A DNA stretch of 64,000 nt, taken from the IMG/VR virus record IMGVR_UViG_3300048597_000634, positions 1 to 64,000 of that record. One strand, given 5' to 3'. This document shows, one piece after another, positions 2,947 to 51,330 of the stretch (positions are counted from its first letter, which is position 1; each line of letters starts with the position of its first letter). A program made the position numbers and the translations under genes. The notes below the pieces were generated by a model. That model saw nothing but the letters and a program-made list of their open reading frames with translations, was not told where the DNA came from and made no database searches.

Positions 2947-3140
2947 CGCTAAAAATTTGACACTCCCTCCGTTAATTGCTGACGCAATCTTAACGGGGGA
3001 TTCTTAGATTCACACCTAAGAGTTTCTGCTTCACAGATTGGTAACTAGGCAAAGCCCCCGTCCCATCATCTCCACAGACGTTTTTGGATACGCTATGCCC
3101 TAGCGCATATTCAGTACCTCGATTCCTGATTACTTGTGCA
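2937..3140 (-). ncRNA. Putative TnpB omega/re-RNA: scaffold overlapping the tnpB 3' end, guide taken from flanking DNA (ATTTTTAGCGGTGACGGCCG...)
   Basis: Established TnpB biology places the RNA across the element's right end, and that end is visible at 2957. The RNA 5' boundary is approximate. Confidence 0.55.
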
Positions 3141-35304: not shown

Positions 35305-38300
35305 TTAAGCAGATAGTTCATCGTAGGTAGATATAGCATTTTGGTCGCCTTCTACAATCTGTAGGTATTCGTCTGTGTCTAAGGCAGTACCTACCAGTAA
35401 CTTATCGGGGCGAGCCACTTCATAAGTTAAAGAGGCACCAGTATCTGTATCTACCATACTGATTAAATTACCGTCATCAAGTTTTATCTCACCCGGGTCA
35501 CCTTCCCACATTTCATCAGTGACATCTGCTATGAAGTTAACTACCTGTGATGCTGCAGAAGCCGCCGCTGCTACCAACTCATTAGCAAAGTCATCTTCAG
35601 TGGCGCTATAGAAGCCGTGGTTAACCGGTCTGCCGCTAAGAACACCACCGACGACACGACCTAATAAGCCGGCGCCAATCTCAGTGACCATCCGACCTAA
35701 ACCAGAGTCACCTACAGTTAGTTCTTCTCCCAAGATAGGATTACCTTTGCGGTCTAAACCATGACCGCGGGCCATGTCTATGGCAGTACCGGCGCCGGCC
35801 GCTAAGCGACCCATACCTTGGTAAATAGTTTCATTAAGAACGCCGCGGGCTAATGCTTCGGTAGGTGAATCATAGTATCGGAAGTAATCCTTCATACGAG
35901 CCATTTGAAGGTTATCCGAAGCCCGGCGGACCTGAGCTAATCTAGCAGCACGGTCTTCCTCTGACTTACCATCCATCAACATCAAAGAGGACGCAGATTG
36001 CTCAAAGGTTCCAGAAGTAATGGCTGAAGAAAACACGTCTTGGACTAGTCCGCCTACTTGTTCAGTAATAGGTATATCACCCTGCATGGCAGCGAATAAG
36101 GTGGGTATAGCTAAGATACTGAGTGCCTCAGTAAAGCCATAGTTACGGCGCAGGGCCTGCTCTGTTTCATTTTGCTGACGGGCTATTTCCCTGTTTTGTC
36201 TATTCTCCCCAGCGTGGGTAATAGCTGTTTTAAGAGCTTGATGTTGTGCTGGTATTGATAAAGTTTCAGGATTAACCCGTCTTTGACCGAAGTCGTTATC
36301 AGTGCCTCCCGAGGTAGGTGTAGTTGGGGTAGGCATTGTCGTTACAACGGTTGGAGCCGGTCCAACTTCTTGTGTACGGAACTGCTCTAGTTGTTTACCT
36401 AGTATTTTACGTTCACCTGCGCTATCTACTCCCATATCCTGTAAGACCGATGTGGTGCCTTCTTTGTTAACCAAAGTAGTTAGCTGTTCTGCCGTTAACT
36501 CTTGGGTCATTCCTTTATCAGACAGACCTTTATTAAAGTCATCAGCCATATCTTGAGTGGCAACAAACCGGGGCTCTTTGTTGCTCGTAGCCCACTCATA
36601 GGCAGGGAGAGCGGCGTTAGCAGCAGCATCTAAGGCATGGCGCCCACTTTGGGATAAATCCTCTGGGTTTATACTGCCAAGTTCAATAGCATCTTGCATC
36701 ATGTCATTCCACTGAGCAACGTGACCTGTGAAGCCAGAACCAGAGGCTATAGCGTCTATTACCCCTGCTTGCATGAGGGCTTTAAGGACACCGGTTTGTA
36801 AGGTATTAGTCTCGCCATCGACCAGTAAATTGGCGGCGCTAAGACGACCTTCACCAGTCGTTAAGTCGACATCATCTCCACCATACCGAGCTAATTTGCT
36901 TGCTAGTTGCTGTCTACCGTCCTCTGTTTCTAATGCACTAGCATAGCCCTCAACAGTACCTACTTGACCTGCTATGTTCTGGTCAATGACGTCTTGTATT
37001 TGGTCTGGTAGGACGCCACCCATGGACAGGAATGACATAACGGCGCCGCCCAGTTTCGTATCAAACTCCTGGCCATCTCCTAACGAAGATGCGTAGGTTC
37101 TTACGGATTCTAAGACGTTAGTTAACCCAGTGGACATTGCCTGGGCTAGAGAAGCCTGGTTTAGTTTAGCGGAGTCAATACCTTGGGCCTGGGCGACCGT
37201 TTCACTGCCCATAGCTTCCATAGACTCAAATACTGTGAGGCTGGCTAGTTTTTGGGCGTCTATTAGAGCGTCTTTAACAGCGCCGAACTCTTCTGACTGA
37301 CCATCGGTTACTACACCTTGCACAGCTTGGTTTAGCTGTTTAGTTTTCATCATGACGTCCATAAGGTCGTCTGCCTGGTTACGGACAGTGACTTCCTGTA
37401 GGGTTCGGAAGGTAGTGGCAGCTACTTCGTTGACGCTGAGGTCTTGACCGGCAGCTTCGGCTTCAATAGCACTACGATTAGATGATAATTCGTTATAACG
37501 GTCGTTTAGTTCACCTGTCATGGTTGAGGTGAAGGCATCTGCTTCAGCGTCGGCGCCGTGGGTAGCTGTGTTCCAAGTCGAGAACGCGCCATCCGCCGCT
37601 GCTAGACGCCGGTTGACTTCCGTGGCTTTCTTACGTCGAGATTCTATTTCTCTAATTTGTCGTTCATGGTCAGACTTAGCATCTTCTACAGTCTCGAACG
37701 CCACTGACCTGCCCCTGTTTACATCGCGTAGTCTACTATCAGGGTCATTACTATTTAATAGTGCCAAGTCAGACCGTAATTTGGTCTCATTTTGCATTAT
37801 GCCTTCTGACCAAGTGCGGGCCTCTTCTATTGACCCAAAGGACTCGTCCGCGTTCCGACCCTTGTTTATAGCTGAGAGAGTATCTGCTTCTGTGCCGGAT
37901 TTAGACTTCTCTATGATGTCTAAGTAAGAAGTAGCGAGGTTTTCGTTAGCTGTAATAGTTAAGTCTTTGTCAGACACGCCGCTCATTCGAGTCAGTCTTC
38001 TGCGTAGTTCTGCTTGTATATTTTCAGGCCCAGAGCCCAGCAACGTAGAGGCGTCTACATCAGTTAGTCGTAAGTCAGGGTTTCTTTCTAGACCTAGTTT
38101 TCTGTTTAGGTCAGATAATGCCTTTTCCTTGGTACCGGCTTTAATCTTCGCGGCGGCGGCCTCTAACTGCCAATCTACATCTCCTGCCTCAATATCATTT
38201 ACTGTTAAAGCATCGTCACCACTGAGGTTAAACTTACGGTTATAAGCGTCTAACTTATCCTGCATTTGATAAGCAGCGTTTTTCCGTAGGATGGCGTCAG

Positions 38301-41300
38301 AATCTGCTGTACGAACAATCTTATAGGTTGGGTCTTGTGTTGGGTCAGTCTGTTCGTTAACTTGGACCTCCAAACCATGGGTGTATAAAGTCCGCTCAGT
38401 AGCCATTGGGTCAGTAGATTTAAAGTCATCTGCCACCGAGCTACCGCCGAGGAACTGAGACTGGAACTTACCGATTAAGTCGGCAATAGTGTTCTGAACA
38501 AAGGCGTCGTTGTCTATGTACCAACTACCATCTTGCTCAGATCTAAGGACTCGGTCAACCATCTCTGGTTTAATCCCTGCGCTCCGTAATGCCTGTTTCG
38601 CTGCATCAATGCGGTCAGTATCGCCACTGCTCTTACTAGCTAAATATTCTTTAACTTGGGCGTCATGGGTAGTTAAGCGCTCTGATAAGTCGTCTCTGGT
38701 TGCCTTTAGAGCGTCACTGTAGTGACCGGACTCCAGCATCTCTTCAGCTGTCATTGCGCGGCTACCAGTGTAGTCAGTTAGTAACTTCAACATACCGAAG
38801 GCGGTCATATCACCGTCTAGCTGAACACTATTGTTAGTACCTGCTTTGTCCCGTGAGTAGTTAAGCAGCTCACCGGCCCTAGCTCCTAAAAAGTCCTGGC
38901 TGATTATTTCCAGGTATTGTCTAGATACATCTTCCTCTGCCGCCGCTGGTTGCATCTGTAGCAATTTGTCATAGCCTTCTATGTTGGACCAGTCCTGTTC
39001 TTCCATACCGGCAATGCCTAGGCTTTTTATCTGCTGTACGGCACTATTGCTGAGCCTAAACTTGCTAGCCATCTCTACCAGACCGACCTTACCTTTAGGT
39101 TTAAGGGCTGCGTCCCGCAGGTATTGTTGGGTGGTTAACATAAAGCGGTAGGCTGTGGACGCTTTGGCCTCTTTACGGTCCATGCTTAGTTCCCAAGGCA
39201 CTCCGCTAGTATCCGTCATAGACCCTAAACTATCAGCTATAGCGCTAATGGTTTTAGCCAGGTCCACCTGAGGTATATTAGCATTAGTCTGCTGTAATTT
39301 CTCAATAGAATTGAGGAAGTCAGCGCGCACGGAGTCATTACTCATCATGCGATTCATGAGAGAGTCAGTCATCTGAGTAACTGCGCTGGGCACTACGGTG
39401 TTATAGACTTTACCGAGTAGTCCACCCCCAGTGGTACCCATGATGGACTGTATGGAACCTAAGTCAGCGGGGCTAATCTGACTACCAGCAACGTTACTAA
39501 ATATCTTGCTAGACGTAGTGATAGACATGAAGATGGCTTCGGATTGGTTTTGGAATTCCGCCACTTTTTTCATATAGTCATCTATAGACATCTTTTGCAT
39601 GTCTTCTATGACTTTCTGACGTACTGCTGCCTCATCTAGCGTGCTGCCACCTTTTATTCTTTGATGTATTTCTTCTTTTATTAAGGCTTGGTTCCACTGT
39701 TCAGCGGCGGCTACCATTTGATTGACGGTCATCGTGGTACCACCGCCGGCGCCGCCCCTACTGGCTTTCATACCTTCAACATCAAAACTAAGGCGCCCCT
39801 TGTCATCAATAGACACCTTATTATCTACCTCTTTAAGCCAGGCAAATGCCCCGACAGAGTTAGTGGTATCATCGGCGCGGTCACTGTAACCACTGATAGT
39901 GTCTCGATATTGCTTAACAGTTCCAGCTAACTCGTTATCATGTAGCCCGTATTGGTAGACGTCTTCACCTTGGGCATTAGTGACGTTATCTCCAAATAGG
40001 TAGGTAGGTAGGGCAAGGTAAGAAGACACATAGGACCGTAGACCTTTATAAGCTTTATCCCCTTTGACTTGTTGAGTCTCGCGGGCTTCACGGTTAATAT
40101 CCCGCAGGTCTTTGGTAGCTCGTTGGTTTAGCTCCTTAGCTTGCTTAGCCCTGCTATTAACTATATTTAGTTCTCTCTCTACCGTCCTTATTTTTTTGTC
40201 TATAGCATCTATTTCATTAAGGTCTTTAGGTTGTTTTGCTTGAGCTAGTTCTTTGCGAGCTACTAACTCCTTTAAAGCATTCTTCAACCGATTGGTACTG
40301 TCTTCAATAGTTTTAAGTTGTTCGTTAGTTTGAGCAATAGTGCTCTGGGCTTTAGTGATGCTACTAAGCGCTGCTTGGTATGAGTCGCCGTCGTAGTCCC
40401 CTAACCCCATGAATTGGAACCCGAAGGCACTAATCATCATCAGGGTATTATCAGCTGATTCATCGGGGGTGAAGAGGCTATTAACGAGTTGACCCCGTTT
40501 ACGCATCTCTTCCATGGTTACACCTTGTAAGGCACTTAGTGCAGAAGCAACGCCGCGGGGGCCTGCTGCTGAACCATATGGAGAACCTTGTCGACCTGCT
40601 ATGAGGTCAGACCGTAAGAAGTGGGCGTCTACCTTAGCAAGGATTTCATTACGGTTTTCTTTGGTTACTTCTTGACCAGTTATGAGTTGAAGTTCAACTA
40701 GGGTTCTAGACTTACCGCTGGACTCGTAGGCTTGTAAGAGTTCGACCTCAGTGAAGGTGCGGGCTTTACTGGAATCACCTTCACCTTCGGCGTAGGCCAG
40801 GGCGTAGTCAGACACCAACTTGTGCCACTTTTGTAGTTTCTCATATGCTTTATCTGCTGCTAGGGCATTAGATTTAGCTTTGGACAGCAAATCAGTTAAA
40901 AAGCTGTTGAAGGAGGTGCGCTGCTCCTTTAATGTCATACTTGTTTGCTCTTCAGTGCCTAACTCCAACAGCTGAATAACATGTGAGTCTAGTGTTTTAC
41001 CCTTACTTAGACTGTCAAAGGCTGAGATGATAGTAGACTTAGTGTCATCTGTAACAGTTAGTTCACCTTTTGTTATCTGGTCCCCACTGTATTTTAATAC
41101 CTTCAAAATGTCGTGTACTGTATCCCTATCTATGTCTTTGCCAGTCTTAGAAAAGGATAGTAGCTTGTCATACATAGCACCCATTTGACTTGCCTGGGCT
41201 ACTTTGTCTACCTGACTTACTCTTTGAGTACGCAGTGTTTTAGTCTGCTGTTTGACGCCCTTATCTAATTCTTTAAATCTACCAGAGATGTCATCGGCCA

Positions 41301-44300
41301 TTAATTTTCGGGCAACCTTAAACTCTTCTTGCTTACGCTCTGCCTTTTGTTCCGCCGTAACGTCTGCGTAGCTCTTAGCTTCTTCTAAAGGTACCTTGGC
41401 TTCTACTGGCGTCGACCTAGGTTTTTTACCTAGAGCTCTGTTTATAACTTCATAGGTACCGCTGACTAAACTATCAAAACTTACTTGACCTTCTCTGGTC
41501 TTTCTAGTTACGACCTTCTTCCCTTTATTTGACTTTCTGATATCTGAAGCACGCTGCGCTTTAGCCCGAGCTTTGTCTAACCAACTCTCTCCTATATAGT
41601 CATTATCAGTAAAAGATAGAATTTGCTGAACGTTACTAGACAGAAATGATTTCACCCTCTTATATAACTGTAAATCTACAGAGGCTGTATCCCCTTCAGA
41701 TGCTTCTATTTGTTTAATTAGTAGGTCTATATCTAGCGTTGCTTCGTTATATCTATCAGTGCCGAATAAACTAGAGCTGGCGTCACTACTCAACTTAGTT
41801 AGGTAATCCTTAACTTCATATATGACCGACGCCTGACTTTTAGAAATAGAAACATCAGTTACTGGGGCAACATAAGACCCAATACGCTTGCCTACTGCCT
41901 TCTTGGTGTCCGTTATGACAGCTATTTGTTTTTGTAGCTCTTGCGCCGCTTGTAAAGCATCTCTGCTTTTGGCCTCATCTGTTATGGCAAACTGGTTAGC
42001 GACATCGTTTTGAATCTTTAGCTTCTCCTGTAAACTCTCCAGATTCTCAGCCAAAGTACGGTCTTGCCCTTCCGGCGACATACCTAACATGTCATTCCAA
42101 CTTGACAACTCAGACTGCAAATAGGCTATCTTATCGGTGCCCTTTGTCTCAATCGCCTCCGCTAGTTGAGCTTCCAAGTTATGTTTTTCCTTATAGTGCC
42201 CGATTAAGAACTTACGTTGGTCTGGGTCAACCAACAAGTATTTTTCCATATCTCTATTTTTAGGTGCTACGTCCGCCATAAATCGTAGATAGCCGCCAGC
42301 AGTAGTAACCCCAGATGCAGAGTCAAACCGCTTACCCAACGCCACCTCAGTAGCTCCTACTAAGAAACTATTCATAGCGATGAATGAAGTACCCATCATG
42401 TTTAGACGGTTACCAGTCGCCTGACGGATACTGTTCTCGTTTTGGAGAATGCTAATAGCAGTGACCTTAGACATCATCATCGCCTCTTGTAGGTCTAATA
42501 GCTGCTGCCATTCCTCTTGGGTCACACTGGTTGTCTTATTTTGTTTTTCGCCCAAGTAAGAGGAAATCAAGCCGGCTTCAACCTTGTCTATTAAGCCCTT
42601 AGCGGCGGATAGTTTGGACACTAGATTTTGTTGAGCCTCTAACGCGTCATGACTGCTGTTCTGGAACAACAAAGACATCTTCTCTAAGACGTCGAGCCCA
42701 AGGATTAGACCAGTATCGCTAAAGCGTTCACCTTTGACGTTAGTGTGATGCCGCAGTCGTATCTTGCCTACTTCAAAGGAGTCTACGGCGTAGGAGGACA
42801 AGGATATAAACTGGGTCTTTTCTAGGCTACGTTTAAGGCTTAATAGCCGTTCTTGTTGGGCAGTAAGATTACCGCGGGGATTTAGATTACCAGCCCCTAG
42901 ACCTAATACAGTTTTGTACATGCTCTTCATACCTTCTAGGTATGCTGCGCCGCGGTCTTGTGATTGAGCGTGTTGTATCTTTTGGTATATGTTGCCACCA
43001 GGCGCCGCCATCCTAGCTATCTCATCTGCCTTTAAGAATTTATTAGCATCCTCAGAGCCGCCGCGCATAGCTATAGAGAACCAAGTATCAGTCTCTGTGG
43101 GTTGTTGGGCTGACATGTGGTCTAAGTAGCCAATGATGCCCCCCTCTCTTGCAGGTTGTAAATCTATTAGTTCTTTTCTTACCTCTTCTAATTCGCTTCT
43201 GGTTTTTTCACGATAATCTAAGCGTGCTTCTGTAGTTGGGACAGCGCCAGACCTTCTGTTCTTTTTAGTATTCTTAACTCTACCCGGTATACGACCTTCA
43301 TATGACCTATTCTGAGCTCTGTATTTATCGGTCAACACATTTAAAAGCCCATCTTCACCTACAAGTACTGCATCTATAACAGTCATTAGCTTTTCTGCAC
43401 TAAGCACATCGTTGCCTGTAGGGTTAGTTAGGCTACTCTCCATAAAAGCCAAGGACTTCGATATTTCGCCTACTTTAGTTTTATCAGCGCCTTTTATACC
43501 TATTACTTCTCTTGATATGCCTTTTAACTCACTAACAATGCGTAGTAGTGTTTTAGCATGTTTACCAGACGCGTCATATCTTACAGCGGAAGCGCCACGC
43601 AGTAACGCTGCATCTTCGTCACTCACACGCTCATTAAAGATACCGTCCTTTAATATCTCGTCTTTATTCCTGTCACCTTTTATCACCTCAGCTATGAAGT
43701 AATCTATCTGCTTCTTATAGGCGCTCTTCTCTGCTGCCAAAACCGCACTTATACGTTTAGCATCCTCCTCAGTCTGCCCTGACGCCATGGTGTAGCTAAG
43801 GTAATCATTTAACCCCGCCGATAATTCTTTAGTTACTCTCGCAACAGTACGCTGTCTAGTTATTCCAGCACTTAAACTGTCATACGTTAGGGTAGCTAAA
43901 GCCTTAGCTCGGTGCTCTAGTTCTGCCTCTGGGCTATCAAAATTCTTACCAGCGGGACCGTAGGCGATAGTGTTAATGCGCTGCATCATGTCTACTACGT
44001 CTGAGTCTCTCTTGCCGTCCTTAACACCGTCACTAACAAAGTCATATATATTTACACGGGAGAAGCCCACCTCGCTTTCTTCACCAGGTAGAGCGTTACG
44101 GTAAAGGCTATTGTAGTTAGCCAGGTAATCCCAGATGAATTGTTTAGACTGGGCGGCGGCACTCTGACCTTTAGGCTTACCTTTACGCTTAACCAACTTA
44201 TTAGTCTCATCTACTTCAACATCACCCCAGCGCCACTCGTTAATATTCATCAAGTCCATAGCCATCAGAGTCTCGCGCTGCTTGGCGTTAGGGATAGATC

Positions 44301-47300
44301 CGTAATAAGCCTTAGTAAGACTCATTAGGGCGTTTTGTACAGAGGTTAGGTCTGCAAATTCTTCTGGGGAGTAGGTATATTGTTTGAGTTGCCGTTCTGT
44401 CATAGAGCGGCTTAAGTGACCTTCAAGGGCTGTAGAGTCTTTACTACCTGCCGGGGTGCTAATCTTACTAAAATTAGTCTCCATTGGGATAGTTATGGTG
44501 CGGGCTTGCTGAATAGCCGCTGTAATACCTTCAAAGACAAGCTCTACTTCCTTGAGTGCTCTGTATTCGCCGTCAGTCAAAGCATCATCTGACTCACTGG
44601 ACTTAATTTTATTTAAGATGCCTTTTATCAGCTCTTGGCTGGGCAAAGAGTAACCCATACGCTGGGCTTGAACACGCATAGCATCTTGTATAACGGTGCC
44701 GCCCCGGTCTGCTAAACCACCATATGCCTCTACGGCACTATAGAAACCAATTAAGGCAGAGAAGCTGGAGCCCACAGGCTGGCTTTTAGCACGATCAGCG
44801 GTGTTTATGGTCTCTAACATGCCGGGCTGGAATGAGCTTAGTAACTTACCGAACTCAGAGTCAGAGGAAAAGTTGGTAATGCCAATTTCCCGTAGACGGT
44901 CTTCTAACTTCAGTAGTTGTGAGCCCATATCACTGCGTTTGATAACTATCCTACGCAGAGTGCTGTCAAATTTAGTCCTTAATGCCTTCTGTGCATCGCT
45001 AGCGAATTCGCCAGTTGAGGCGATCAAGTCATCTATGACGCTGCGGTGGGTCATATTTCCCTTAGTGATAGACTTAATAGCCTCAAGGTAGGGGTTATAC
45101 TCGCTCTTGTCTAAGTCTTGAATGTATTTATGCTGCTCACTTTGGTACATGGTCTGCATAGGGGACCATAGAGCAGTGGTAGCAAAACGTTTCTCTAAGT
45201 TAGTCTGTTGATTAAGCTCGGGTGACAAATCAAATCTACTCTTAGCTGTTCCAGCTCTAGTTAAGAAGCCATCTATGTCTAAGTCTTGATTAAGTATGCG
45301 GTTTACGGACTCCATATCACCGCCAGATATCTTATGGATTTCCCCAGCTATCAGGTATGCTTCCCTGCGCTTCATTTCTATTTGTCTTTGCCTTCTACCT
45401 TTCTTGTCTTCGTCGGCGCCTAAATTGAATAAGTTATTAAGGACAGTCAAGACAGAATCACGGGCAGCCTCATACTTCTTATCTACTTCTGCCAGACCCT
45501 CGTCGCCACGAATTAGGCTTAATGGAGAAGTAAAGAGACTCTGACCGCTGAGAATAACTTCACCCAAAGCTCGGGTTGTTCTTAATTGTTCTGGGGTCAA
45601 GTCCCGATAAATATCGGCGCTGGCTTTAGTCAAGAAGGATAATAACCCTACTGGCTTAGTATCAAAGTCTTCTATGATTACTCCGCCTCTAGACTTCTCA
45701 CTAAAGGTATAGTCAAGTAGACCTTTAGCTGCTCTTGTTAGGTTATCTCTAGCTTTTTGTACTTCTGTGTCTTTAGCGTCACCCAATGCGACAATAACTT
45801 GGTGTAATAAAGCAGACTCTACGCTTTCTGAGTCACTAGTCCACTTACCAAAACCACCTAAAGCGCTAAACATGGCTAAGGAAGCCGAACCAGGTGCACT
45901 AGAAAAGGTCTTAAACCCTTTACTGACATCTGTTTCTAACCCCATTAGGCTTTTCTTAGCTCTTAAAGAGGCGGCGTACTGCTTACCATCGCCGTTATTT
46001 AAAGTAGAGCTTAACCGGTCATAGAGCATAGCTAGGTTATTATCCCCACCTATGGTCTTAGCGTCGGCGTTAATAAAGAGCATCGACAGGGCTAGAGCTA
46101 CATTCATCCCACCACTAGTCTTATCTGTCAAGCGCTTATAGATACCGCTTTCTTGGCGGTCACTCAGCATCATCAAACCAATCTCAAAGTTGAAGGCTTT
46201 AACCTGAGAAGGGCTAATCATGGAGTAGATGTCTTCTGCGCTTACTTCTCTACTGTCATTACCAGACTTAACAGAGGAAGGCAGTAAGTTTATAGACTCT
46301 TGTCCCATTAGACCTCTAGCCGCCTCGAATAGGGCTAGCTGACCTCCTTTCATGGGACCTTTAGGGATAATCGAGCCGGCCCGCATACCACTCATAAAGT
46401 CTTCTACGTTGTAGAATCTGGTGTCTATGGTGGCAGTATTGCCGGACATGGAAGTGACTGTTACTTCCCCTAGGACACTGATAGAGTTCAGTTCATCGCC
46501 CGTAATAGCTGGTACCCGAAGCTGCATTGGCTGAGCGTGCCCTCCATCGTAGGACATAAAGCCCCACATCTTAAAGGCGGCGTCGCCGGGGTCTAGGTCA
46601 CCTACTTTAGCGCCGGTGGTGTTCACTGTTGACACCTCACCGACTTGGCGCCCGCCTTGATAGGCACCACGGTTTAACACATAGCCTACCTGACCTGTTT
46701 TATGGTCAGTTATAACCCGTATACCTTGGTTCTCTTCCCGGACCTTAGCCACCGCTCCTTTGTAGATAGCGTCTATCTGGGCGGCGTCTATGTCTTGGTC
46801 AATCTTTTTAAATGCGTCTATGATGCCAGCTCTAATTCCTTGTCTAGTTACAGCGCCCTCAGTGTCCACGTTGAAGTTAATAGCTGGCAGATTCTTAGCA
46901 ACGGCTACTTCTTTAATAGTCAGCTGTAGTTTTTCGTTTAGTTGCTTATTAAGGTCAGCGATTACCTTCGTGTGTTGAATAGTGGTATCCCTGGCAATGA
47001 ATACAGTACCGGGCTGTAGGTATTGTTGGACGGAACTTTGCAGTGCTGCTGGACCAATCATGCCGCCGCTGAGAGTGATGTTAGTCTGAACCGGGTGAGG
47101 TTTTAATAGCTTCATGCCGTATTCATACTCGGACCTTCTATACCCTGTGTTCTGGATGCCATAGTCGCTGAGTTGGGTAGCCCCGGCAATAAGAATGCTA
47201 AGGCGCGGGCGCTCACTACCCATATACCCCTTACCTACTGCTCTATCATCAATAGCTATCTCCTTAGCTATTTGGAGCATCATTGCCCGCTCTAAATCAT

Positions 47301-50300
47301 AAATCTTCTTCTTATCTACGCCCTTACGGGGGTCTCCCTCTCTAGCAAAACGCTCCTCCATCATCGCTATTAGAGCGTGATATTGTTGGGCTGGCATGCT
47401 ATCTAGTAACCGACCACCAATGATATCTTCAGGGGCATCAAGAAAGTTCTTCTTGCCACTACCCTTGCCAGCGTCGTAGTCAGAGTATTTACCGTTAAGA
47501 CCTAATGAATAGGAATAATCAATGAACTCCCTGCTTGCGTCATACATAGGCCTGGTGGACAGCAGGTTTTTCATCCGCTGCATGATTTGCTCAGTCTTGG
47601 CGTAGGGGAAGTAATAGAGCAGGTCGTATTCTTTAGCCTCCTCCTCTTCTTTAGTGCCAACTTCAGACCCGTACTTTGGATTAAAAGTTTGAGCTTCTAG
47701 CGCTTTAGTTACTTTATCGACGGCATCACCTTCTACGCCCATCTCTTTTAATAGACGTGCTGACCGTTCTTTATACCCTTTACGGTCTATAGCCTGTAAC
47801 GTAGGCATAGTGTTAGCTAGCCCTAGCATGCTATAGACAACTGGAGCGCCGCCTTGAATCTTAGTAAGACCGCCTATCTTCTCAGTAAAGGATTGGTGTT
47901 GTGCTCTACCTACAGCTTTTCCTACTGTGCGGAGATATTGCCCTCCGTCGGGTGAACCTAACATTTCACCATGGCTAAGAGGGTATGGGTTAAGAATAAG
48001 CCCCCCTATCCTACCGTCTACCAGGGAAGGGTCTATGCCTATACCAGGAGACACTAACCGGAATAAGTCCATAGTTTCCGGCGTAAGACCAACTACAGGT
48101 TTAGAGTGTAGGGATTGCCCATGGCTGTAGTTTTCTGTATGTGGTTGGGAATAGGCGTCTACTTGTCTAGAGTAAGATTCACTATAGCCAGAGGCTACGG
48201 TATCTCTGTAGATTTGCATGCCTACTGGGGTAGCACCGAAGGCTTGCATAATTATGTCGTTATAGCGCCCAGTGAAGCCTGAGGTATAGTCGCGGGCATC
48301 GTCTGGTCTTAACCCCACAGACTTCTCCATCATCATGCTGAAGTTATGGACTAGTCTACTTGCTAAGTCTTGGGCGTTAGCTTGTCTAGAGCCGGGGATG
48401 ATTTGGTTGAATAAAGTACCTATTTCACTGCCCCGCTGACGCATAACATCGGATTCAGGGCCGGAATAACGTGGGATTATGTCTGATTGTCCAGACACGC
48501 CGGCTAAATCACGCTGCAGCAGTGTTAATACACCCTCAAGATTACCTTCCTTCTGTATGAGGTTAAGTAAAGACCCTAGACCTTGTTCTCTAGCAACCAG
48601 TACCTTGTGTATTTCTGAGTCTGGTGTAGAATCACCGTGCTTGTTATATAGGTAAAGACTAGACACTCTATCAGCCAGGGTACCTTCTAAAGCCTTCTTC
48701 ATCACATCTGACCCTAGTGCTTCGTAAGTATAGGCAATACCCCGCACTTTAGTCTCGTAATTCATGCTGGTACGCATAGTACTGAGGAAGCCGCCTAATA
48801 CGTCTAAGGCGTTGGCTTCATAGCTGCCTTGTGGTCCTAACTGAGCGTTCTCTACTGTGCGGTCTATTTCGTTGTAGCGGATGAAGTTGAACGTGCTGTC
48901 AGTAGCGTTTTCAAAGACCGCCCCGGTTAGGAATCGCTGGGTCTTGTTAATGTAGACCATGGGGCTTTCTATTACTGTCATAGCGCCGCCCGGTCCAGAC
49001 TGAACTGACTTCCGCTCAGACCCAATAGTCAAGCCAATAGAGTAGTCTTTAGCGCCCATATTAGGCTGGGCAATGCTTATTTTTAGTCCAGTAAGACGGT
49101 AGCCGGTGGAAGACTTGGTATCTAAGATATATTCTTTTTTGTATCGGAAGGGCGCGGCTGAGGCGTCATCTGCAGTAGCCTCTTTACCACCCATCCTTTC
49201 TATCATCTCTATCGCACTGTTAACAAACTCAGCCTTACCCTTTTGTTGTACTTGGGTGCCCTGATATCGGTGCCTCAAGCTTTGTCCATAGCGCCCTAAT
49301 ACACCACCAGAGTCGGGCTTTTCTTCATCAAACCTACCAATACCGTAGAAGTAATTATTCTTAATACGTTGCTGGTCTGCAGCGGATAGTAGTCCTAAAG
49401 AGTCACCGCGGAAGAAAGCAGATACTTCGATGTTATCTGTGGTGCTTTCCCTATCTCTGGGTTTTAAGGCTTTCTCACTGAAGTTAGCGGAGCCGAGAGT
49501 ATATTCCAGTAGGTCGCCGGCGGCACTGAACATGGCCATAGACTTACTGTGCATATACTGCGTAGGCATCAACGTAAATGCACTTTCACCACGCGCACCT
49601 GGTTTTAATAAAGACTCGACAAGGTCGTATCTCTTCTGTTGTCCTTCGTCTAGGGTACTACGGTTTACTTTAGAGAACTTATCAAGTAGGTCAAATAGCC
49701 CTTGATTAGACCCCATACTGGAGCCAGACACTCCTATCTTGAGGTTGCCCTTTGATGCTAGTTTTTGAAGGTTTTCTATGTCAGCGCCGTCAAATAGCGT
49801 ATCTTCAAACTTACCACCCCGACCTATAAGAGCTTGCTCAAAGTATTGAGCAGTGATGACCAGCTTATTAGAGTCTTCAGCAGCAGTCTTAAACATGCGG
49901 CTAAATTGCCCCTTAATCTCTTGATTGGCGAAAATAGTGCGGTTCTTCTCATTTACGCCTGCTGCCGATGCACTTTGTATGTTTTCCCTAAAGCGCTGAA
50001 AGAAACTAGTCGAAGCTGATATATCAGAGAGACTAGTAATAGCTGTGTTGTTACTTATTTGGTCTCTGGTTACTTTAATGAGAGCATCGGCCGCTGCTTT
50101 AATCTCAGATGACACGCGGTTAAAAGACCCCAACTTGTCCTCATCTACCGGTCTATTAATTAAGACTAAGTCTTCTACTGTATTTGACTTAGCTAGGGTG
50201 TTAGTTAAGTTCTGCGTGCTGATGAAGAAAGACTCGATCTGCTCAGTTTTAGCGACAAGCTTACCCTCTTCATCTATAACTCTTTTATTTTCATACCAGT

Positions 50301-51330
50301 AACCCAACTTGGCGTGGACACTGCCGCCTGGCATTTGTAGCCCGCCGAGCTCTAACTGTCTATTATTCCTCTCAGCCAGCGTTTGAGCTGCATAGATACT
50401 AACATCATTGCCACCATAGATACCCATAGGGTCAGAGCCTTCTTCCTGAGTACCGTAACCAGCAGATAACACTTGTGCCGAAGATATTCGTTGGGTGACT
50501 AACTCAGTTCTACCTGTGCGTTCAGTAATAGCGGTCATGAAGCCAGCTTCTTGAACTTGAAATATAGACCCTCTAAAGCCCAACCCAGACCGCTCTTTGT
50601 CAGCAAACATGTTGTAGTAGTCCTGGGTAGTAGGTCTACTCATGTAGCCTTCTGGTGTGGCGTAACTGTCAGAAGTTAGTTTGAGTTGTCTACTGAACCT
50701 ACCATCGCTGTCTATAGACTCAGCAAGGCGGTTACCTTGGAACCGGGCGTTGTTGTCGTAATAGCTAAAGGTGCGTTCTGACGCTTCGTCTAAATTCAAC
50801 CCTGAGCTACCTATAGCCGAACCGAACCCACGGCGGCTAACATTCTGCTTGAACTCTTTAGAAAAGTCTTTAAGCGCCTTATACGGGTCTTGTGACCTAG
50901 TGTGGACGTCTTCTACAAATTGGGAGGTGATAGAGTGCCCAGCGACGTTGGTTCTTAAGCGATTCCAGTGGGCTTGTTGCTCTGGAAATGCTGTGCGTAC
51001 ATTACTCTCTGTCTCTAAAAATTTATCTACTAACTCTTTGGTTATTACATATTGTGTTGTTTCACCTCTTTCGTCTACAACTTCACGGATAGCTTCTACT
51101 AACCGCCAAGAAAATGCGCTGGCGGTCATAGCCGGGCCTTCGGCAGCTAACTTATCTTTTACTGCTTCAAGTACTTCTTCGCGACCAAGTAGCTCTATTA
51201 AACCTCGTAGAGCGGCGTCTGCTTGTATATCAAAATCTGACACTATGATTACGTCTCCGTGAGAGAGGCTATAGTCCCACTTTACTTGCAAAAAAGAACC
51301 CGGCTCTGGGCGGAGTCGGGCGGCGGGCAA
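35305..51330 (-). CDS. Giant protein (5341 aa) in the tape-measure position: putative ejected virion two-barrel RNA polymerase with an N-terminal tandem PLD/nuclease-like module
   Basis: HAK (50308-50316)...STQNL and HSK (49543-49551)...GSANFS...NIE. Beta-like SGMRAGSIIPKG...DIYSMISPSQVK (about 46200-46390), IAGRQGSP (RQGSP at 40579-40593), FMGLGDYDGDSY (GDYDGD at 40384-40401). Hydrophobic Gly/Ala segments near the C-terminus. Lies directly after a frameshifting chaperone-like gene. Confidence 0.7.
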   Translation of the reverse strand: MPAARLRPEPGSFLQVKWDYSLSHGDVIIVSDFDIQADAALRGLIELLGREEVLEAVKDKLAAEGPAMTASAFSWRLVEAIREVVDERGETTQYVITKELVDKFLETESNVRTAFPEQQAHWNRLRTNVAGHSITSQFVEDVHTRSQDPYKALKDFSKEFKQNVSRRGFGSAIGSSGLNLDEASERTFSYYDNNARFQGNRLAESIDSDGRFSRQLKLTSDSYATPEGYMSRPTTQDYYNMFADKERSGLGFRGSIFQVQEAGFMTAITERTGRTELVTQRISSAQVLSAGYGTQEEGSDPMGIYGGNDVSIYAAQTLAERNNRQLELGGLQMPGGSVHAKLGYWYENKRVIDEEGKLVAKTEQIESFFISTQNLTNTLAKSNTVEDLVLINRPVDEDKLGSFNRVSSEIKAAADALIKVTRDQISNNTAITSLSDISASTSFFQRFRENIQSASAAGVNEKNRTIFANQEIKGQFSRMFKTAAEDSNKLVITAQYFEQALIGRGGKFEDTLFDGADIENLQKLASKGNLKIGVSGSSMGSNQGLFDLLDKFSKVNRSTLDEGQQKRYDLVESLLKPGARGESAFTLMPTQYMHSKSMAMFSAAGDLLEYTLGSANFSEKALKPRDRESTTDNIEVSAFFRGDSLGLLSAADQQRIKNNYFYGIGRFDEEKPDSGGVLGRYGQSLRHRYQGTQVQQKGKAEFVNSAIEMIERMGGKEATADDASAAPFRYKKEYILDTKSSTGYRLTGLKISIAQPNMGAKDYSIGLTIGSERKSVQSGPGGAMTVIESPMVYINKTQRFLTGAVFENATDSTFNFIRYNEIDRTVENAQLGPQGSYEANALDVLGGFLSTMRTSMNYETKVRGIAYTYEALGSDVMKKALEGTLADRVSSLYLYNKHGDSTPDSEIHKVLVAREQGLGSLLNLIQKEGNLEGVLTLLQRDLAGVSGQSDIIPRYSGPESDVMRQRGSEIGTLFNQIIPGSRQANAQDLASRLVHNFSMMMEKSVGLRPDDARDYTSGFTGRYNDIIMQAFGATPVGMQIYRDTVASGYSESYSRQVDAYSQPHTENYSHGQSLHSKPVVGLTPETMDLFRLVSPGIGIDPSLVDGRIGGLILNPYPLSHGEMLGSPDGGQYLRTVGKAVGRAQHQSFTEKIGGLTKIQGGAPVVYSMLGLANTMPTLQAIDRKGYKERSARLLKEMGVEGDAVDKVTKALEAQTFNPKYGSEVGTKEEEEAKEYDLLYYFPYAKTEQIMQRMKNLLSTRPMYDASREFIDYSYSLGLNGKYSDYDAGKGSGKKNFLDAPEDIIGGRLLDSMPAQQYHALIAMMEERFAREGDPRKGVDKKKIYDLERAMMLQIAKEIAIDDRAVGKGYMGSERPRLSILIAGATQLSDYGIQNTGYRRSEYEYGMKLLKPHPVQTNITLSGGMIGPAALQSSVQQYLQPGTVFIARDTTIQHTKVIADLNKQLNEKLQLTIKEVAVAKNLPAINFNVDTEGAVTRQGIRAGIIDAFKKIDQDIDAAQIDAIYKGAVAKVREENQGIRVITDHKTGQVGYVLNRGAYQGGRQVGEVSTVNTTGAKVGDLDPGDAAFKMWGFMSYDGGHAQPMQLRVPAITGDELNSISVLGEVTVTSMSGNTATIDTRFYNVEDFMSGMRAGSIIPKGPMKGGQLALFEAARGLMGQESINLLPSSVKSGNDSREVSAEDIYSMISPSQVKAFNFEIGLMMLSDRQESGIYKRLTDKTSGGMNVALALSMLFINADAKTIGGDNNLAMLYDRLSSTLNNGDGKQYAASLRAKKSLMGLETDVSKGFKTFSSAPGSASLAMFSALGGFGKWTSDSESVESALLHQVIVALGDAKDTEVQKARDNLTRAAKGLLDYTFSEKSRGGVIIEDFDTKPVGLLSFLTKASADIYRDLTPEQLRTTRALGEVILSGQSLFTSPLSLIRGDEGLAEVDKKYEAARDSVLTVLNNLFNLGADEDKKGRRQRQIEMKRREAYLIAGEIHKISGGDMESVNRILNQDLDIDGFLTRAGTAKSRFDLSPELNQQTNLEKRFATTALWSPMQTMYQSEQHKYIQDLDKSEYNPYLEAIKSITKGNMTHRSVIDDLIASTGEFASDAQKALRTKFDSTLRRIVIKRSDMGSQLLKLEDRLREIGITNFSSDSEFGKLLSSFQPGMLETINTADRAKSQPVGSSFSALIGFYSAVEAYGGLADRGGTVIQDAMRVQAQRMGYSLPSQELIKGILNKIKSSESDDALTDGEYRALKEVELVFEGITAAIQQARTITIPMETNFSKISTPAGSKDSTALEGHLSRSMTERQLKQYTYSPEEFADLTSVQNALMSLTKAYYGSIPNAKQRETLMAMDLMNINEWRWGDVEVDETNKLVKRKGKPKGQSAAAQSKQFIWDYLANYNSLYRNALPGEESEVGFSRVNIYDFVSDGVKDGKRDSDVVDMMQRINTIAYGPAGKNFDSPEAELEHRAKALATLTYDSLSAGITRQRTVARVTKELSAGLNDYLSYTMASGQTEEDAKRISAVLAAEKSAYKKQIDYFIAEVIKGDRNKDEILKDGIFNERVSDEDAALLRGASAVRYDASGKHAKTLLRIVSELKGISREVIGIKGADKTKVGEISKSLAFMESSLTNPTGNDVLSAEKLMTVIDAVLVGEDGLLNVLTDKYRAQNRSYEGRIPGRVKNTKKNRRSGAVPTTEARLDYREKTRSELEEVRKELIDLQPAREGGIIGYLDHMSAQQPTETDTWFSIAMRGGSEDANKFLKADEIARMAAPGGNIYQKIQHAQSQDRGAAYLEGMKSMYKTVLGLGAGNLNPRGNLTAQQERLLSLKRSLEKTQFISLSSYAVDSFEVGKIRLRHHTNVKGERFSDTGLILGLDVLEKMSLLFQNSSHDALEAQQNLVSKLSAAKGLIDKVEAGLISSYLGEKQNKTTSVTQEEWQQLLDLQEAMMMSKVTAISILQNENSIRQATGNRLNMMGTSFIAMNSFLVGATEVALGKRFDSASGVTTAGGYLRFMADVAPKNRDMEKYLLVDPDQRKFLIGHYKEKHNLEAQLAEAIETKGTDKIAYLQSELSSWNDMLGMSPEGQDRTLAENLESLQEKLKIQNDVANQFAITDEAKSRDALQAAQELQKQIAVITDTKKAVGKRIGSYVAPVTDVSISKSQASVIYEVKDYLTKLSSDASSSLFGTDRYNEATLDIDLLIKQIEASEGDTASVDLQLYKRVKSFLSSNVQQILSFTDNDYIGESWLDKARAKAQRASDIRKSNKGKKVVTRKTREGQVSFDSLVSGTYEVINRALGKKPRSTPVEAKVPLEEAKSYADVTAEQKAERKQEEFKVARKLMADDISGRFKELDKGVKQQTKTLRTQRVSQVDKVAQASQMGAMYDKLLSFSKTGKDIDRDTVHDILKVLKYSGDQITKGELTVTDDTKSTIISAFDSLSKGKTLDSHVIQLLELGTEEQTSMTLKEQRTSFNSFLTDLLSKAKSNALAADKAYEKLQKWHKLVSDYALAYAEGEGDSSKARTFTEVELLQAYESSGKSRTLVELQLITGQEVTKENRNEILAKVDAHFLRSDLIAGRQGSPYGSAAGPRGVASALSALQGVTMEEMRKRGQLVNSLFTPDESADNTLMMISAFGFQFMGLGDYDGDSYQAALSSITKAQSTIAQTNEQLKTIEDSTNRLKNALKELVARKELAQAKQPKDLNEIDAIDKKIRTVERELNIVNSRAKQAKELNQRATKDLRDINREARETQQVKGDKAYKGLRSYVSSYLALPTYLFGDNVTNAQGEDVYQYGLHDNELAGTVKQYRDTISGYSDRADDTTNSVGAFAWLKEVDNKVSIDDKGRLSFDVEGMKASRGGAGGGTTMTVNQMVAAAEQWNQALIKEEIHQRIKGGSTLDEAAVRQKVIEDMQKMSIDDYMKKVAEFQNQSEAIFMSITTSSKIFSNVAGSQISPADLGSIQSIMGTTGGGLLGKVYNTVVPSAVTQMTDSLMNRMMSNDSVRADFLNSIEKLQQTNANIPQVDLAKTISAIADSLGSMTDTSGVPWELSMDRKEAKASTAYRFMLTTQQYLRDAALKPKGKVGLVEMASKFRLSNSAVQQIKSLGIAGMEEQDWSNIEGYDKLLQMQPAAAEEDVSRQYLEIISQDFLGARAGELLNYSRDKAGTNNSVQLDGDMTAFGMLKLLTDYTGSRAMTAEEMLESGHYSDALKATRDDLSERLTTHDAQVKEYLASKSSGDTDRIDAAKQALRSAGIKPEMVDRVLRSEQDGSWYIDNDAFVQNTIADLIGKFQSQFLGGSSVADDFKSTDPMATERTLYTHGLEVQVNEQTDPTQDPTYKIVRTADSDAILRKNAAYQMQDKLDAYNRKFNLSGDDALTVNDIEAGDVDWQLEAAAAKIKAGTKEKALSDLNRKLGLERNPDLRLTDVDASTLLGSGPENIQAELRRRLTRMSGVSDKDLTITANENLATSYLDIIEKSKSGTEADTLSAINKGRNADESFGSIEEARTWSEGIMQNETKLRSDLALLNSNDPDSRLRDVNRGRSVAFETVEDAKSDHERQIREIESRRKKATEVNRRLAAADGAFSTWNTATHGADAEADAFTSTMTGELNDRYNELSSNRSAIEAEAAGQDLSVNEVAATTFRTLQEVTVRNQADDLMDVMMKTKQLNQAVQGVVTDGQSEEFGAVKDALIDAQKLASLTVFESMEAMGSETVAQAQGIDSAKLNQASLAQAMSTGLTNVLESVRTYASSLGDGQEFDTKLGGAVMSFLSMGGVLPDQIQDVIDQNIAGQVGTVEGYASALETEDGRQQLASKLARYGGDDVDLTTGEGRLSAANLLVDGETNTLQTGVLKALMQAGVIDAIASGSGFTGHVAQWNDMMQDAIELGSINPEDLSQSGRHALDAAANAALPAYEWATSNKEPRFVATQDMADDFNKGLSDKGMTQELTAEQLTTLVNKEGTTSVLQDMGVDSAGERKILGKQLEQFRTQEVGPAPTVVTTMPTPTTPTSGGTDNDFGQRRVNPETLSIPAQHQALKTAITHAGENRQNREIARQQNETEQALRRNYGFTEALSILAIPTLFAAMQGDIPITEQVGGLVQDVFSSAITSGTFEQSASSLMLMDGKSEEDRAARLAQVRRASDNLQMARMKDYFRYYDSPTEALARGVLNETIYQGMGRLAAGAGTAIDMARGHGLDRKGNPILGEELTVGDSGLGRMVTEIGAGLLGRVVGGVLSGRPVNHGFYSATEDDFANELVAAAASAASQVVNFIADVTDEMWEGDPGEIKLDDGNLISMVDTDTGASLTYEVARPDKLLVGTALDTDEYLQIVEGDQNAISTYDELSA

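What the first reader, a model, noticed from the sequence alone, without database searches (positions are those of the whole stretch)
49440..50400. Tandem HxK phospholipase-D/nuclease-like module at the N-terminus of the 5341-aa protein
Seen: VHAKLGYW...FFISTQNLT...NTVEDLVLI (H339) and MHSKSMAM...TLGSANFSEKAL...DNIEVSAFF (H594), with LVITAQYF between them. Both repeats lack the usual D at +6. Established: PLD-family enzymes build one active site from two HxK motifs with GSxN and downstream N-x-E elements, and include nucleases (Nuc, BfiI) and lipid-modifying enzymes. Inference: an ejected domain that could breach or remodel membrane during entry, cut host DNA/RNA, or process the RNAP's own transcripts.
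Basis: partly seen in the sequence, partly recalled or inferred. Interest (0 to 1): 0.6.

Follow-up and report, generated by a model that had tools for sequence, protein, structure and literature searches.

The report
PLD-type phosphodiesterase module in giant cyanophage protein
Near the start of a 5341-residue phage protein encoded beside the head genes lies a genuine two-lobed phospholipase-D-superfamily enzyme module whose catalytic residues are the only invariant positions across about 60 related giant proteins; it most resembles DNA-cutting members of that superfamily, but its substrate and its delivery into the host are untested.

Summary
Residues 230-720 of the 5341-aa ORF (window 49171-50643, minus strand) fold as a two-lobed PLD-superfamily domain. 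The AF2 model has pTM 0.78. VIA-align gives Z 18-20 to vaccinia F13, PssA and PLD3/4. All 41 Foldseek PDB hits at E<=0.001 belong to the PLD superfamily.

An exhaustive profile search found 59 clusters, nearly all giant proteins of 3000-5400 aa with the module near the N-terminus, and no ordinary PLD protein. In 53 long members (17-67% identity) the only invariant columns are H339, K341, Q373, N374, T376, E386, H594 and K596.

Relatives pass Pfam thresholds (PLDc_2, RE_NgoFVII). The best curated matches are DNA-targeting PLD nucleases: Azaca ZacB, DISARM DrmC and NucT. No lipid-enzyme family matched.

The family includes the 3562-aa gp080 of the cultured Microcystis phage Ma-LMM01, which has the same gene order. 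The host here is probably a cyanobacterium.

Best reading: a catalytically intact PLD phosphodiesterase, more likely acting on nucleic acid than on lipid. Ejection with the genome is possible but rests only on gene position. The RNA polymerase identity of the rest of the protein could not be verified. This is a new variant of a known kind, of moderate interest.

The parts
35305..51330 (-). Giant ORF, 5341 aa from TTG (the database call starts at GTG V30, window 51241-51243, giving 5312 aa)
   Evidence: Full-length homologues of 3000-5400 aa are found.
49171..50643 (-). PLD-superfamily module, residues 230-720
   Evidence: AF2 model with pLDDT 73 and pTM 0.78. Foldseek PDB: 41 hits at E<=0.001, all PLD superfamily. 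VIA-align Z 18-20 over about 300-340 aligned residues. BFVD and ESM Atlas matches agree.
49867..50643 (-). Lobe 1 (residues 230-488), the diverged repeat
   Evidence: Secondary structure of the model. No Pfam hit on this lobe. Its motif residues are invariant.
50308..50316 (-). HxK motif 1 (H339-A-K341)
   Evidence: H and K are present in 60 of 60 family sequences and invariant in A3.
50209..50220 (-). S371-T-Q-N374, the GSxN equivalent of lobe 1. The family consensus is G-T-Q-N-I-T.
   Evidence: Q373, N374 and T376 are 60 of 60. Position 371 is G in 41 and S in 18.
50173..50181 (-). T384-V-E386, the N-x-E equivalent of lobe 1
   Evidence: E386 is 60 of 60.
49336..49866 (-). Lobe 2 (residues 489-665), the repeat that sequence models recognise
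   Evidence: In this protein RE_NgoFVII matches at E 0.005, below threshold. In relatives PLDc_2 and RE_NgoFVII hits reach or pass the curated thresholds.
49543..49551 (-). HxK motif 2 (H594-S-K596)
   Evidence: 55 of 55 sequences that reach this far. The other 5 are short fragments. Invariant in A3.
49483..49494 (-). G613-S-A-N616 (GSxN)
   Evidence: S614 is 54 of 56 and N616 is 53 of 56. It aligns with GSAN of nuclease NucT, PDB 6ehi.
49426..49434 (-). N633-I-E635 (N-x-E)
   Evidence: N is 48 of 50 and E is 47 of 50. It aligns with N-Y-E of NucT.
49171..49335 (-). C-terminal helices and low-confidence linker of the module (residues 666-720)
   Evidence: pLDDT is below 50 for model residues 437-470. 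A helix at 471-483 follows.
40384..40398 (-). DYDGD (residues 3645-3649) within an invariant GDxDGD block. This is context only and is not part of the PLD module.
   Evidence: The block is shared with Ma-LMM01 gp080 and Microcoleus phage My-WqHQDG.

Best explanation
Residues 230-720 form a catalytically intact, single-chain, two-lobed PLD-superfamily phosphodiesterase.

Inferred mechanism, from the established chemistry of the superfamily: each lobe contributes one His-x-Lys, a [GS][ST]xN turn and a downstream Glu. One His attacks a phosphodiester to give a phosphohistidine intermediate. The other His protonates the leaving group. No metal is needed.

The module defines a separate PLD subfamily. 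It is found only near the N-terminus of giant proteins (3000-5400 aa) of a lineage of large cyanophages that includes Ma-LMM01 gp080.

The most likely substrate is a nucleic-acid phosphodiester, as in the PLD nucleases ZacB, DrmC, Nuc/NucT and NgoFVII. It is more likely a specific target than the bulk host chromosome, for example foreign or defence-related DNA, or DNA ends.

The gene always sits next to the portal, protease and capsid genes. The protein may therefore be packaged and delivered with the genome, so that the enzyme acts at the very start of infection.

Shown: the fold, the conservation of motif residues, the restriction to giant proteins, and the gene order. Inferred: catalysis, substrate, packaging and ejection.
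For: Fold:
- AF2 model with pTM 0.78.
- All Foldseek PDB hits at E<=0.001 are PLD superfamily: Tdp1, PPK1, PLD3, PssA.
- VIA-align Z 19.8 to F13, 19.1 to PssA and 18.6 to PLD3, with rmsd about 3.9 A over 300-340 residues.

Selection:
- The only invariant columns among 53 long members (17-67% identity) are H339, K341, Q373, N374, T376, E386, H594 and K596.

Subfamily:
- 59 clusters at E<=1e-10, and none between 1e-10 and 1e-3, among 1.84 billion representatives.
- No stand-alone relative of 270-860 aa by word search.
- All 9 loci recovered through the central core also carry the module in the same ORF.

Nuclease lean:
- RE_NgoFVII passes its threshold in P0005.
- NCBIfam DrmC matches 12 of 53 members (best E 6.5e-8) and NucT matches 1. 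No cardiolipin or phosphatidylserine synthase model matched.
- PADLOC ZacB matches 18 of 53 (best E 1.1e-11) and spans both lobes in P0064.
- The Azaca ZacABC complex, whose predicted PLD-like nuclease subunit matches the PADLOC ZacB model, cleaves phage DNA in vitro. Cleavage is lost in nuclease active-site mutants (bioRxiv 10.1101/2025.07.10.664194).
- The nearest language-model clusters are NgoFVII/PLDc_2, as leads only.

Context:
- Gene order with portal, protease and capsid genes is conserved in 10 loci and in Ma-LMM01.
- gp080 is in the same expression class as the portal gene.
Against: - The window's own domain does not reach any curated family threshold. Its best match is RE_NgoFVII at 16.5 bits against a cut-off of 23.8. 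Membership rests on fold and on homologues.
- Structural neighbours mix lipid enzymes (PssA, PLD, F13) with nucleases (PLD3/4, Tdp1) at Z values about 1 apart. Fold does not decide the substrate.
- PADLOC holds only defence proteins, so its matches are biased towards nucleases.
- In Ma-LMM01 infection only 0.17% of host genes changed and host transcripts still made up 67% at 6 h (PMC5780444). This argues against a broadly destructive ejected nuclease.
- I found no virion proteomics that list gp080 in the paper library searched. Packaging is inferred from gene position alone.
Confidence: 0.55

Rival explanations
1. The module is a lipid-directed PLD. Delivered at entry, it hydrolyses or remodels envelope phospholipid, for example phosphatidylglycerol, to help the tail or the giant protein cross the membrane. 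This is analogous to the PLD effectors of type VI secretion.
For: The structural matches to PssA (Z 19.1), bacterial and Streptomyces PLD (Z 14-18) and F13 (Z 19.8) are as good as those to the nucleases. JGI named one homologue 'phosphatidylserine/phosphatidylglycerophosphate/cardiolipin synthase-like enzyme'. Weakly hydrophobic, Gly-rich segments are conserved near the C-terminus of the giant proteins. Host transcription is barely disturbed in Ma-LMM01 infection.
Against: No member matched any lipid-enzyme model in NCBIfam or the classical PLDc Pfam model. DrmC, ZacB, NucT and NgoFVII did match. The strict HxK(x)4D(x)6GSxN spacing of lipid PLDs is not kept: there is no Asp at H+7, and the distance from His to the G/S of the turn is 32 and 19 residues rather than 14.
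Confidence: 0.2
2. The module performs another phosphoryl transfer. It could process DNA ends as Tdp1 does, or attach covalently to a DNA end through phosphohistidine as a pilot protein. It could also act on polyphosphate, as the PLD-like domains of polyphosphate kinase do.
For: Tdp1 tops the Foldseek list (E 1e-9) and, as I recall, also lacks the motif Asp. One homologue gives a weak Tyr-DNA_phospho hit (E 0.029). The ESM Atlas shape search returns only PPK1-type clusters (TM 0.52-0.53), and one NCBIfam PPK hit appears.
Against: TM-scores to Tdp1 are only 0.35-0.42. The sequence matches to Tdp1 and PPK models are marginal and occur in single members. The PPK-specific N-terminal and head domains are absent.
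Confidence: 0.12
3. The module is a catalytically dead structural or binding domain, or the motifs are a chance resemblance.
For: The canonical Asp is missing. Lobe 1 is not recognised by any sequence model. The two lobes do not match each other significantly by profile comparison (E 0.78).
Against: The catalytic His, Lys, Asn and Glu are the only invariant columns across 53 members that share as little as 17% identity. The insignificant lobe-to-lobe alignment still places HxK, the S/GxN turn and x-E in register. The composite motif is far above shuffle expectation. The fold match is strong.
Confidence: 0.03

Closest known systems
Microcystis phage Ma-LMM01 gp080 (3562 aa; UniProt A0A7J4, auto-named 'PLD phosphodiesterase domain-containing protein'; 'hypothetical protein' in GenBank)
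   Same: It is a giant gene divergent from the portal, protease and capsid genes. Its first part is the best BFVD structural match of the window's module (E 1.9e-10). It carries HPK...GTMN...NVE and HVK...GSSN...NQE motifs. Its central GDFDGD...LGKTYNT core is homologous to the family (blastp E 8e-15 to P0041 and 3e-6 to P0006).
   Different: Direct similarity to the window's protein is at noise level: short collinear matches only, and the A1 profile does not find it. It is about 1800 aa shorter. It keeps the canonical Asp in repeat 1 (HPKFFVSD). The papers searched assign it no function.
PLD-like nucleases of anti-phage systems: Azaca ZacB, DISARM DrmC, PbeA
   Same: These are the best curated-profile matches of the family. 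ZacB matches 18 of 53 members (best E 1.1e-11), across both lobes in P0064. DrmC matches 12 of 53 in NCBIfam (best E 6.5e-8). The ZacABC complex cleaves DNA.
   Different: Those are host defence proteins of ordinary size that work with NTPase partners. This module is phage-encoded and fused to a giant protein. The window's own sequence does not reach E 0.01 against these models.
Nuc / NucT / BfiI / NgoFVII PLD nucleases
   Same: The GSAN...N-x-E block aligns with NucT. RE_NgoFVII is the window protein's only Pfam match.
   Different: As I recall, those are single-lobe proteins that dimerise to form the site. Here two diverged lobes lie in one chain. The matches are weak (E 0.005 to 0.2).
Two-lobed PLD enzymes with solved structures: PLD3/PLD4 5' exonucleases, Tdp1, PssA, vaccinia F13, PPK1 C-terminal domains
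   Same: They share the same bilobed architecture over the whole module (Z 17-20).
   Different: Sequence identity is 9-14%. Their substrates range from ssDNA to lipids, so the fold gives no substrate call.
Enzymes carried in virions and ejected with the genome: N4 virion RNA polymerase, T7 gp16 transglycosylase domain, P1 DarB, the RNA polymerase fused to the P23-45 tape measure
   Same: These are very large proteins encoded with or near structural genes that bring an enzyme into the cell (PMC13434306 and PMC10770324, listed; P1 and T7 from my own knowledge).
   Different: As far as I know, none carries a PLD module. Virion residence of the present protein is not shown.

Membership tests
PLD superfamily (HKD; Pfam PLDc_2 clan) | Two HxK motifs that form one active site | tested here: met
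   H339/K341 and H594/K596 are invariant in 60 of 60 and 55 of 55 sequences.
PLD superfamily (HKD; Pfam PLDc_2 clan) | GSxN turn after the beta-hairpin in each repeat | tested here: met
   STQN (family consensus GTQN) and GSAN are present. N374 is 60 of 60 and N616 is 53 of 56. In the model, each HxK precedes a hairpin whose second strand ends at the turn.
PLD superfamily (HKD; Pfam PLDc_2 clan) | Asp of HxK(x)4D | tested here: not met
   Y346 and F601 occupy H+7. Asp appears at H+8 in only 20 of 60 and 26 of 55 relatives. Tdp1, an accepted member of the superfamily, also lacks this Asp (my own knowledge).
PLD superfamily (HKD; Pfam PLDc_2 clan) | Bilobed alpha/beta PLD fold | tested here: met
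   pTM 0.78. Z 18-20 to F13, PssA and PLD3/4. All 41 significant Foldseek hits are PLD superfamily.
PLD superfamily (HKD; Pfam PLDc_2 clan) | Score at or above the curated Pfam threshold | tested here: inconclusive
   Window protein: RE_NgoFVII 16.5 bits against a cut-off of 23.8. Homologues pass: PLDc_2 32.8 (P0023) and 27.2 (P0060) against 27; RE_NgoFVII 24.8 (P0005) against 23.8.
PLD superfamily (HKD; Pfam PLDc_2 clan) | Metal-independent catalysis through a phosphohistidine intermediate | not testable with these tools
   This needs enzyme assays with H339A and H594A mutants, EDTA, and tungstate or vanadate.
PLD nucleases (Nuc/NucT, BfiI, NgoFVII, ZacB, DrmC) | Significant match to a nuclease-type PLD model | tested here: inconclusive
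   Not met by the window protein at E 0.01. Met by relatives: ZacB in 18 of 53, DrmC in 12 of 53, RE_NgoFVII above threshold in one.
PLD nucleases (Nuc/NucT, BfiI, NgoFVII, ZacB, DrmC) | Cleavage of DNA or RNA | not testable with these tools
   A biochemical assay is needed.
Lipid PLDs, cardiolipin and phosphatidylserine synthases | Strict HxK(x)4D(x)6G(S/G)xN motif and a match to lipid-enzyme models | tested here: not met
   There is no Asp. The spacings are 32 and 19 residues. No NCBIfam lipid-enzyme model and no Pfam PLDc model matched any of the 53 members at E 0.01.
Tdp1 (HKN subclass) | Match to Tyr-DNA_phospho (PF06087) | tested here: not met
   Only one homologue matches, at E 0.029. 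Foldseek E is 1e-9 but TM is only 0.35-0.42.
Virion-packaged, ejected enzymes | Presence in purified particles and release on infection | not testable with these tools
   Only the gene order with the head module and the shared expression class with the portal gene in Ma-LMM01 bear on this.
Two-barrel (DPBB) RNA polymerases, for the rest of the giant protein | Recognisable double-psi beta-barrel around the DxDGD motif | tested here: inconclusive
   An invariant GDxDGD is present. The AF2 model is poor (pLDDT 49). There is no Pfam, PHROG, PDB or Atlas match.

The most novel reading that the evidence does not exclude
The giant protein is a capsid-packaged, ejected multi-enzyme. Its N-terminal PLD module acts on DNA at the moment of entry. 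It either cuts defence-related or competing DNA, or forms a phosphohistidine link to a genome end as a pilot. Its central GDxDGD core is a previously unrecognised nucleic-acid polymerase. This would be the first PLD-type enzyme shown to be delivered by a tailed phage. It would also give a function to the largest gene of the Ma-LMM01 group of bloom-controlling cyanophages.
Probability: 0.2. Interest if true: 0.75.

Novelty: new variant of a known kind. Interest (0 to 1): 0.5.

Why it matters
PLD-superfamily enzymes are well known, and databases already auto-label two relatives as PLD-like. This subfamily is nevertheless sharply separated from all other PLDs. It occurs only fused to giant proteins of a cyanophage lineage, and no paper in the searched library discusses it.

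The lineage includes Ma-LMM01, the model phage of toxic Microcystis blooms. Its largest gene is still annotated 'hypothetical', and its infection strategy, with host transcription left almost untouched, is unexplained.

A conserved, apparently active phosphodiesterase at the front of that protein gives a concrete, testable handle: two His-to-Ala mutants, one nuclease or lipase assay, and one virion proteome.

Tried and rejected
Searches that found nothing:
- Direct DNA and protein searches of the module against 50,697 deposited phage genomes found nothing. The central core found nothing either.
- Single-sequence PDB search gave only noise.
- Profile PDB searches gave only a weak NucT match (E 0.17-0.19).
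- PHROGs found no family for any part of the giant protein.
- No relative was found in GTDB species genomes. I therefore found no prophage copy in reference genomes by pattern scan.
- The Ma-LMM01 and My-WqHQDG records gave no hit to the A1 profile. Homology to gp080 was shown instead through intermediate family members and by structure.

Tests that were inconclusive:
- Profile comparison of lobe 1 with lobe 2 was not significant (E 0.78), though the motifs fell in register.
- The RNA polymerase idea: the AF2 model of the GDxDGD region was poor (pLDDT 49, pTM 0.24), so I did not fold-search it. The Atlas feature search was empty. The PDB profile search returned only coiled-coil proteins.
- Net charge and pI of the module vary from 5.1 to 10.2 across the family and say nothing about the substrate.

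Other dead ends:
- A literature hit for 'PLD' in a phage Goslar preprint was only the word 'pLDDT'.
- The precomputed label PF25869.1 on the window's own protein is absent from the Pfam copy at hand and could not be resolved.

Not used: read-mapping tools, complex prediction, alternative genetic codes.
Full report
**What is there**

The window is the first 64 kb of a 205.5-kb viral record that IMG/VR classes as a provirus, estimated 91% complete. On the minus strand, 35305-51330 is one open frame of 5341 codons. The database gene call begins 29 codons further in, at GTG, giving 5312 aa.

- HAK at 339-341
- STQN at 371-374
- TVE at 384-386
- LVITA at 489-493
- HSK at 594-596
- GSAN at 613-616
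- NIE at 633-635

The folded module is wider, at residues 230-720 (window 49171-50643).

**More than chance**

A composite pattern of HxK, a [GS][ST]xN turn, then x-E is expected 0.025 times per shuffle of this protein. Two or more matches occurred in 0.15% of shuffles. A third match, at H3045, lies in a variable coiled-coil region and is not conserved, so I take it as chance.

**Fold**

An alignment of ten full-length homologues (26-67% identity) gave an AlphaFold2 model with mean pLDDT 73 and pTM 0.78. The model has two alpha/beta lobes. In each lobe the HxK precedes a beta-hairpin whose second strand ends at the S/GxN turn, and the x-E precedes the next strand.

Structure comparisons all point to the PLD superfamily:
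- Foldseek against the PDB returned 41 hits at E<=0.001, all PLD superfamily: Tdp1, polyphosphate kinase, PLD3 and phosphatidylserine synthase.
- VIA-align gave Z 19.8 to vaccinia F13, 19.1 to PssA and 18.6 to PLD3, and 14-18 to bacterial and human PLDs. About 300-340 residues aligned at about 3.9 A.
- BFVD and the ESM Atlas agree.

**Conservation**

An exhaustive profile search of 1.84 billion representatives found 59 clusters. All score E<=1e-10, and none falls between 1e-10 and 1e-3. Almost all are proteins of 3000-5400 aa with the module starting 70-290 residues from the N-terminus. The few short hits look like contig fragments.

A word search for stand-alone relatives of 270-860 aa found none.

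In an alignment of 53 long members sharing 17-67% identity with the window's module, exactly eight columns are invariant: H339, K341, Q373, N374, T376, E386, H594 and K596. S614 and N616 exceed 90% (counts). The second refutation condition is also not met.

The canonical Asp is absent here. In relatives it appears one position late, in only a third to a half of the sequences.

**Family assignment**

The window's own sequence reaches no curated threshold. Its best match is the NgoFVII PLD domain at E 0.005. Homologues do reach them:
- PLDc_2 at 32.8 bits (P0023) and 27.2 bits (P0060), against a cut-off of 27
- RE_NgoFVII at 24.8 bits (P0005), against a cut-off of 23.8

These sequence matches always fall on lobe 2. 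Lobe 1 is recognised only by structure and motifs. The two lobes align in register but not significantly.

**Which kind of PLD**

Fold neighbours mix nucleases and lipid enzymes at Z values about 1 apart, so the fold does not decide. Curated profiles lean one way:
- NCBIfam matched DISARM DrmC in 12 of 53 members (best E 6.5e-8), NucT in one and PPK in one. It matched no cardiolipin or phosphatidylserine synthase model.
- PADLOC matched Azaca ZacB in 18 of 53 (best E 1.1e-11), over both lobes in P0064, together with many DrmC models and PbeA.
- Azaca is a PLD-like nuclease-NTPase system. Its ZacABC complex cleaves phage DNA in vitro, and cleavage is lost in nuclease active-site mutants (bioRxiv 10.1101/2025.07.10.664194).
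- The GSAN...N-x-E block aligns with nuclease NucT.

PADLOC contains only defence proteins, so this lean is moderate rather than decisive.

**Context**

Upstream, on the other strand, lie a portal gene (52774-54264), a head protease (55641-56807) and the major capsid protein (56847-58142). This order, with a conserved 267-aa ORF between the giant gene and the portal gene, is kept in all ten related viral contigs and in further contigs.

Loci recovered independently through the central core of the giant protein all carry the PLD module in the same ORF, nine of nine.

The capsid protein is about 30% identical to those of Microcystis phage Ma-LMM01, its MaMV relatives and Microcoleus phage My-WqHQDG.

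Ma-LMM01 has a 3562-aa gene, gp080, in the same position and orientation.
- Its first part is the best viral structural match of the window's module (E 1.9e-10). UniProt auto-names it a PLD phosphodiesterase domain protein.
- It carries both motif sets.
- Its central region is homologous to the family (E 8e-15 to P0041 and 3e-6 to P0006).
- The truncated first gene of My-WqHQDG shares that core.

GenBank calls these genes hypothetical. I found no paper that discusses the domain.

An IS-type transposase in the window (2990-4270) has relatives at 63-88% identity in the 80 best loci, 79 of which are titled as cyanobacterial. The host is therefore very probably a cyanobacterium.

**How it most likely works**

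By the established chemistry of the superfamily, one His forms a phosphohistidine intermediate and the other acts as the general acid. The Lys and Asn residues bind the phosphate, and the downstream Glu residues orient the His residues. All of these are under strict selection here, so the module is almost certainly active.

I put about 0.6 on a nucleic-acid substrate, 0.2 on lipid, and the remainder on other phosphoryl transfers.

A broadly destructive nuclease is unlikely. In Ma-LMM01 infection only 0.17% of host genes changed and host RNA still made up 67% of transcripts at 6 h (PMC5780444).

Delivery with the virion is plausible but unproven. The supporting points are the conserved head-module position, the shared expression class with the portal gene, and weakly hydrophobic Gly-rich segments near the C-terminus.

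**The rest of the protein**

An invariant GDxDGD block (DYDGD at 3645-3649) and an LLGKxYNT block are conserved across the family. The motif recalls two-barrel polymerases, from my own knowledge. No library recognised the region and the model was poor. Published work on the Ma-LMM01 group reports no phage RNA polymerase and sigma-70-like promoters for all gene classes.

**Verdict**

The module is a divergent, apparently active PLD subfamily tied to giant proteins of a cyanophage lineage. It is a new variant of a known kind, of moderate interest.

Noticed in passing
window 13169-22729 (-): A second giant ORF of 3186 aa. Its C-terminal residues 2703-3100 match a Dda-like helicase (phrog_325, E 2e-40). 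The first 2700 residues have no match.
   Followed up: partly
G000:C1:88772-107116 (+), outside the window: A third giant ORF of 6114 aa lies at the end of the plus-strand structural block that begins with the portal gene. One 205-kb phage thus carries three genes of 3186, 5341 and 6114 codons. aragorn found no tRNA gene in the record.
   Followed up: no
window 40384-40398 (-) and 39397-39420 (-): DYDGD lies within an invariant GDxDGD block, and an LLGKVYNT block follows about 330 residues later. Both are conserved from this phage to Ma-LMM01 gp080 and Microcoleus phage My-WqHQDG. They could mark a polymerase-like or other metal-binding core. No fold or family could be assigned.
   Followed up: partly
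window 2990-4270 (-): An IS-type transposase (phrog_506, E 6e-100) has relatives at 63-88% identity in the 80 best loci, 79 of which are titled as cyanobacterial (Crocosphaera, Cyanothece, Spirulina, Microcoleus, Scytonema and others). This is a host clue and a sign of recent gene flow.
   Followed up: yes
window 51806-52609 (-): A 267-aa ORF lies between the giant gene and the portal gene and is conserved in all ten related loci (33-95% identity). In the six more distant loci it lies on the opposite strand relative to the giant gene. Its function is unknown; the only match is a weak phrog_32670 hit.
   Followed up: no
window 36079-36135 (-) and 35632-35697 (-): Two weakly hydrophobic, Gly/Ala-rich segments lie near the C-terminus of the giant protein (residues 5066-5084 and 5212-5233). 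Counterparts occur in most relatives examined, including Ma-LMM01 gp080. They are possible membrane-inserting helices.
   Followed up: partly
window 51241-51330 (-): The start is uncertain. The longest frame begins at TTG 51330, while the database call begins at GTG 51243 (V30). The first roughly 100 residues are poorly conserved among homologues.
   Followed up: partly
window 30344-31066 (+): A 240-aa ORF has a weak endonuclease match (phrog_16880, E 1e-4). It lies on the opposite strand, in a short plus-strand island.
   Followed up: no
P0002, the window's own protein in the protein collection: It carries a precomputed Pfam label, PF25869.1, which is not in the Pfam copy available here. What it names could not be determined.
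   Followed up: partly
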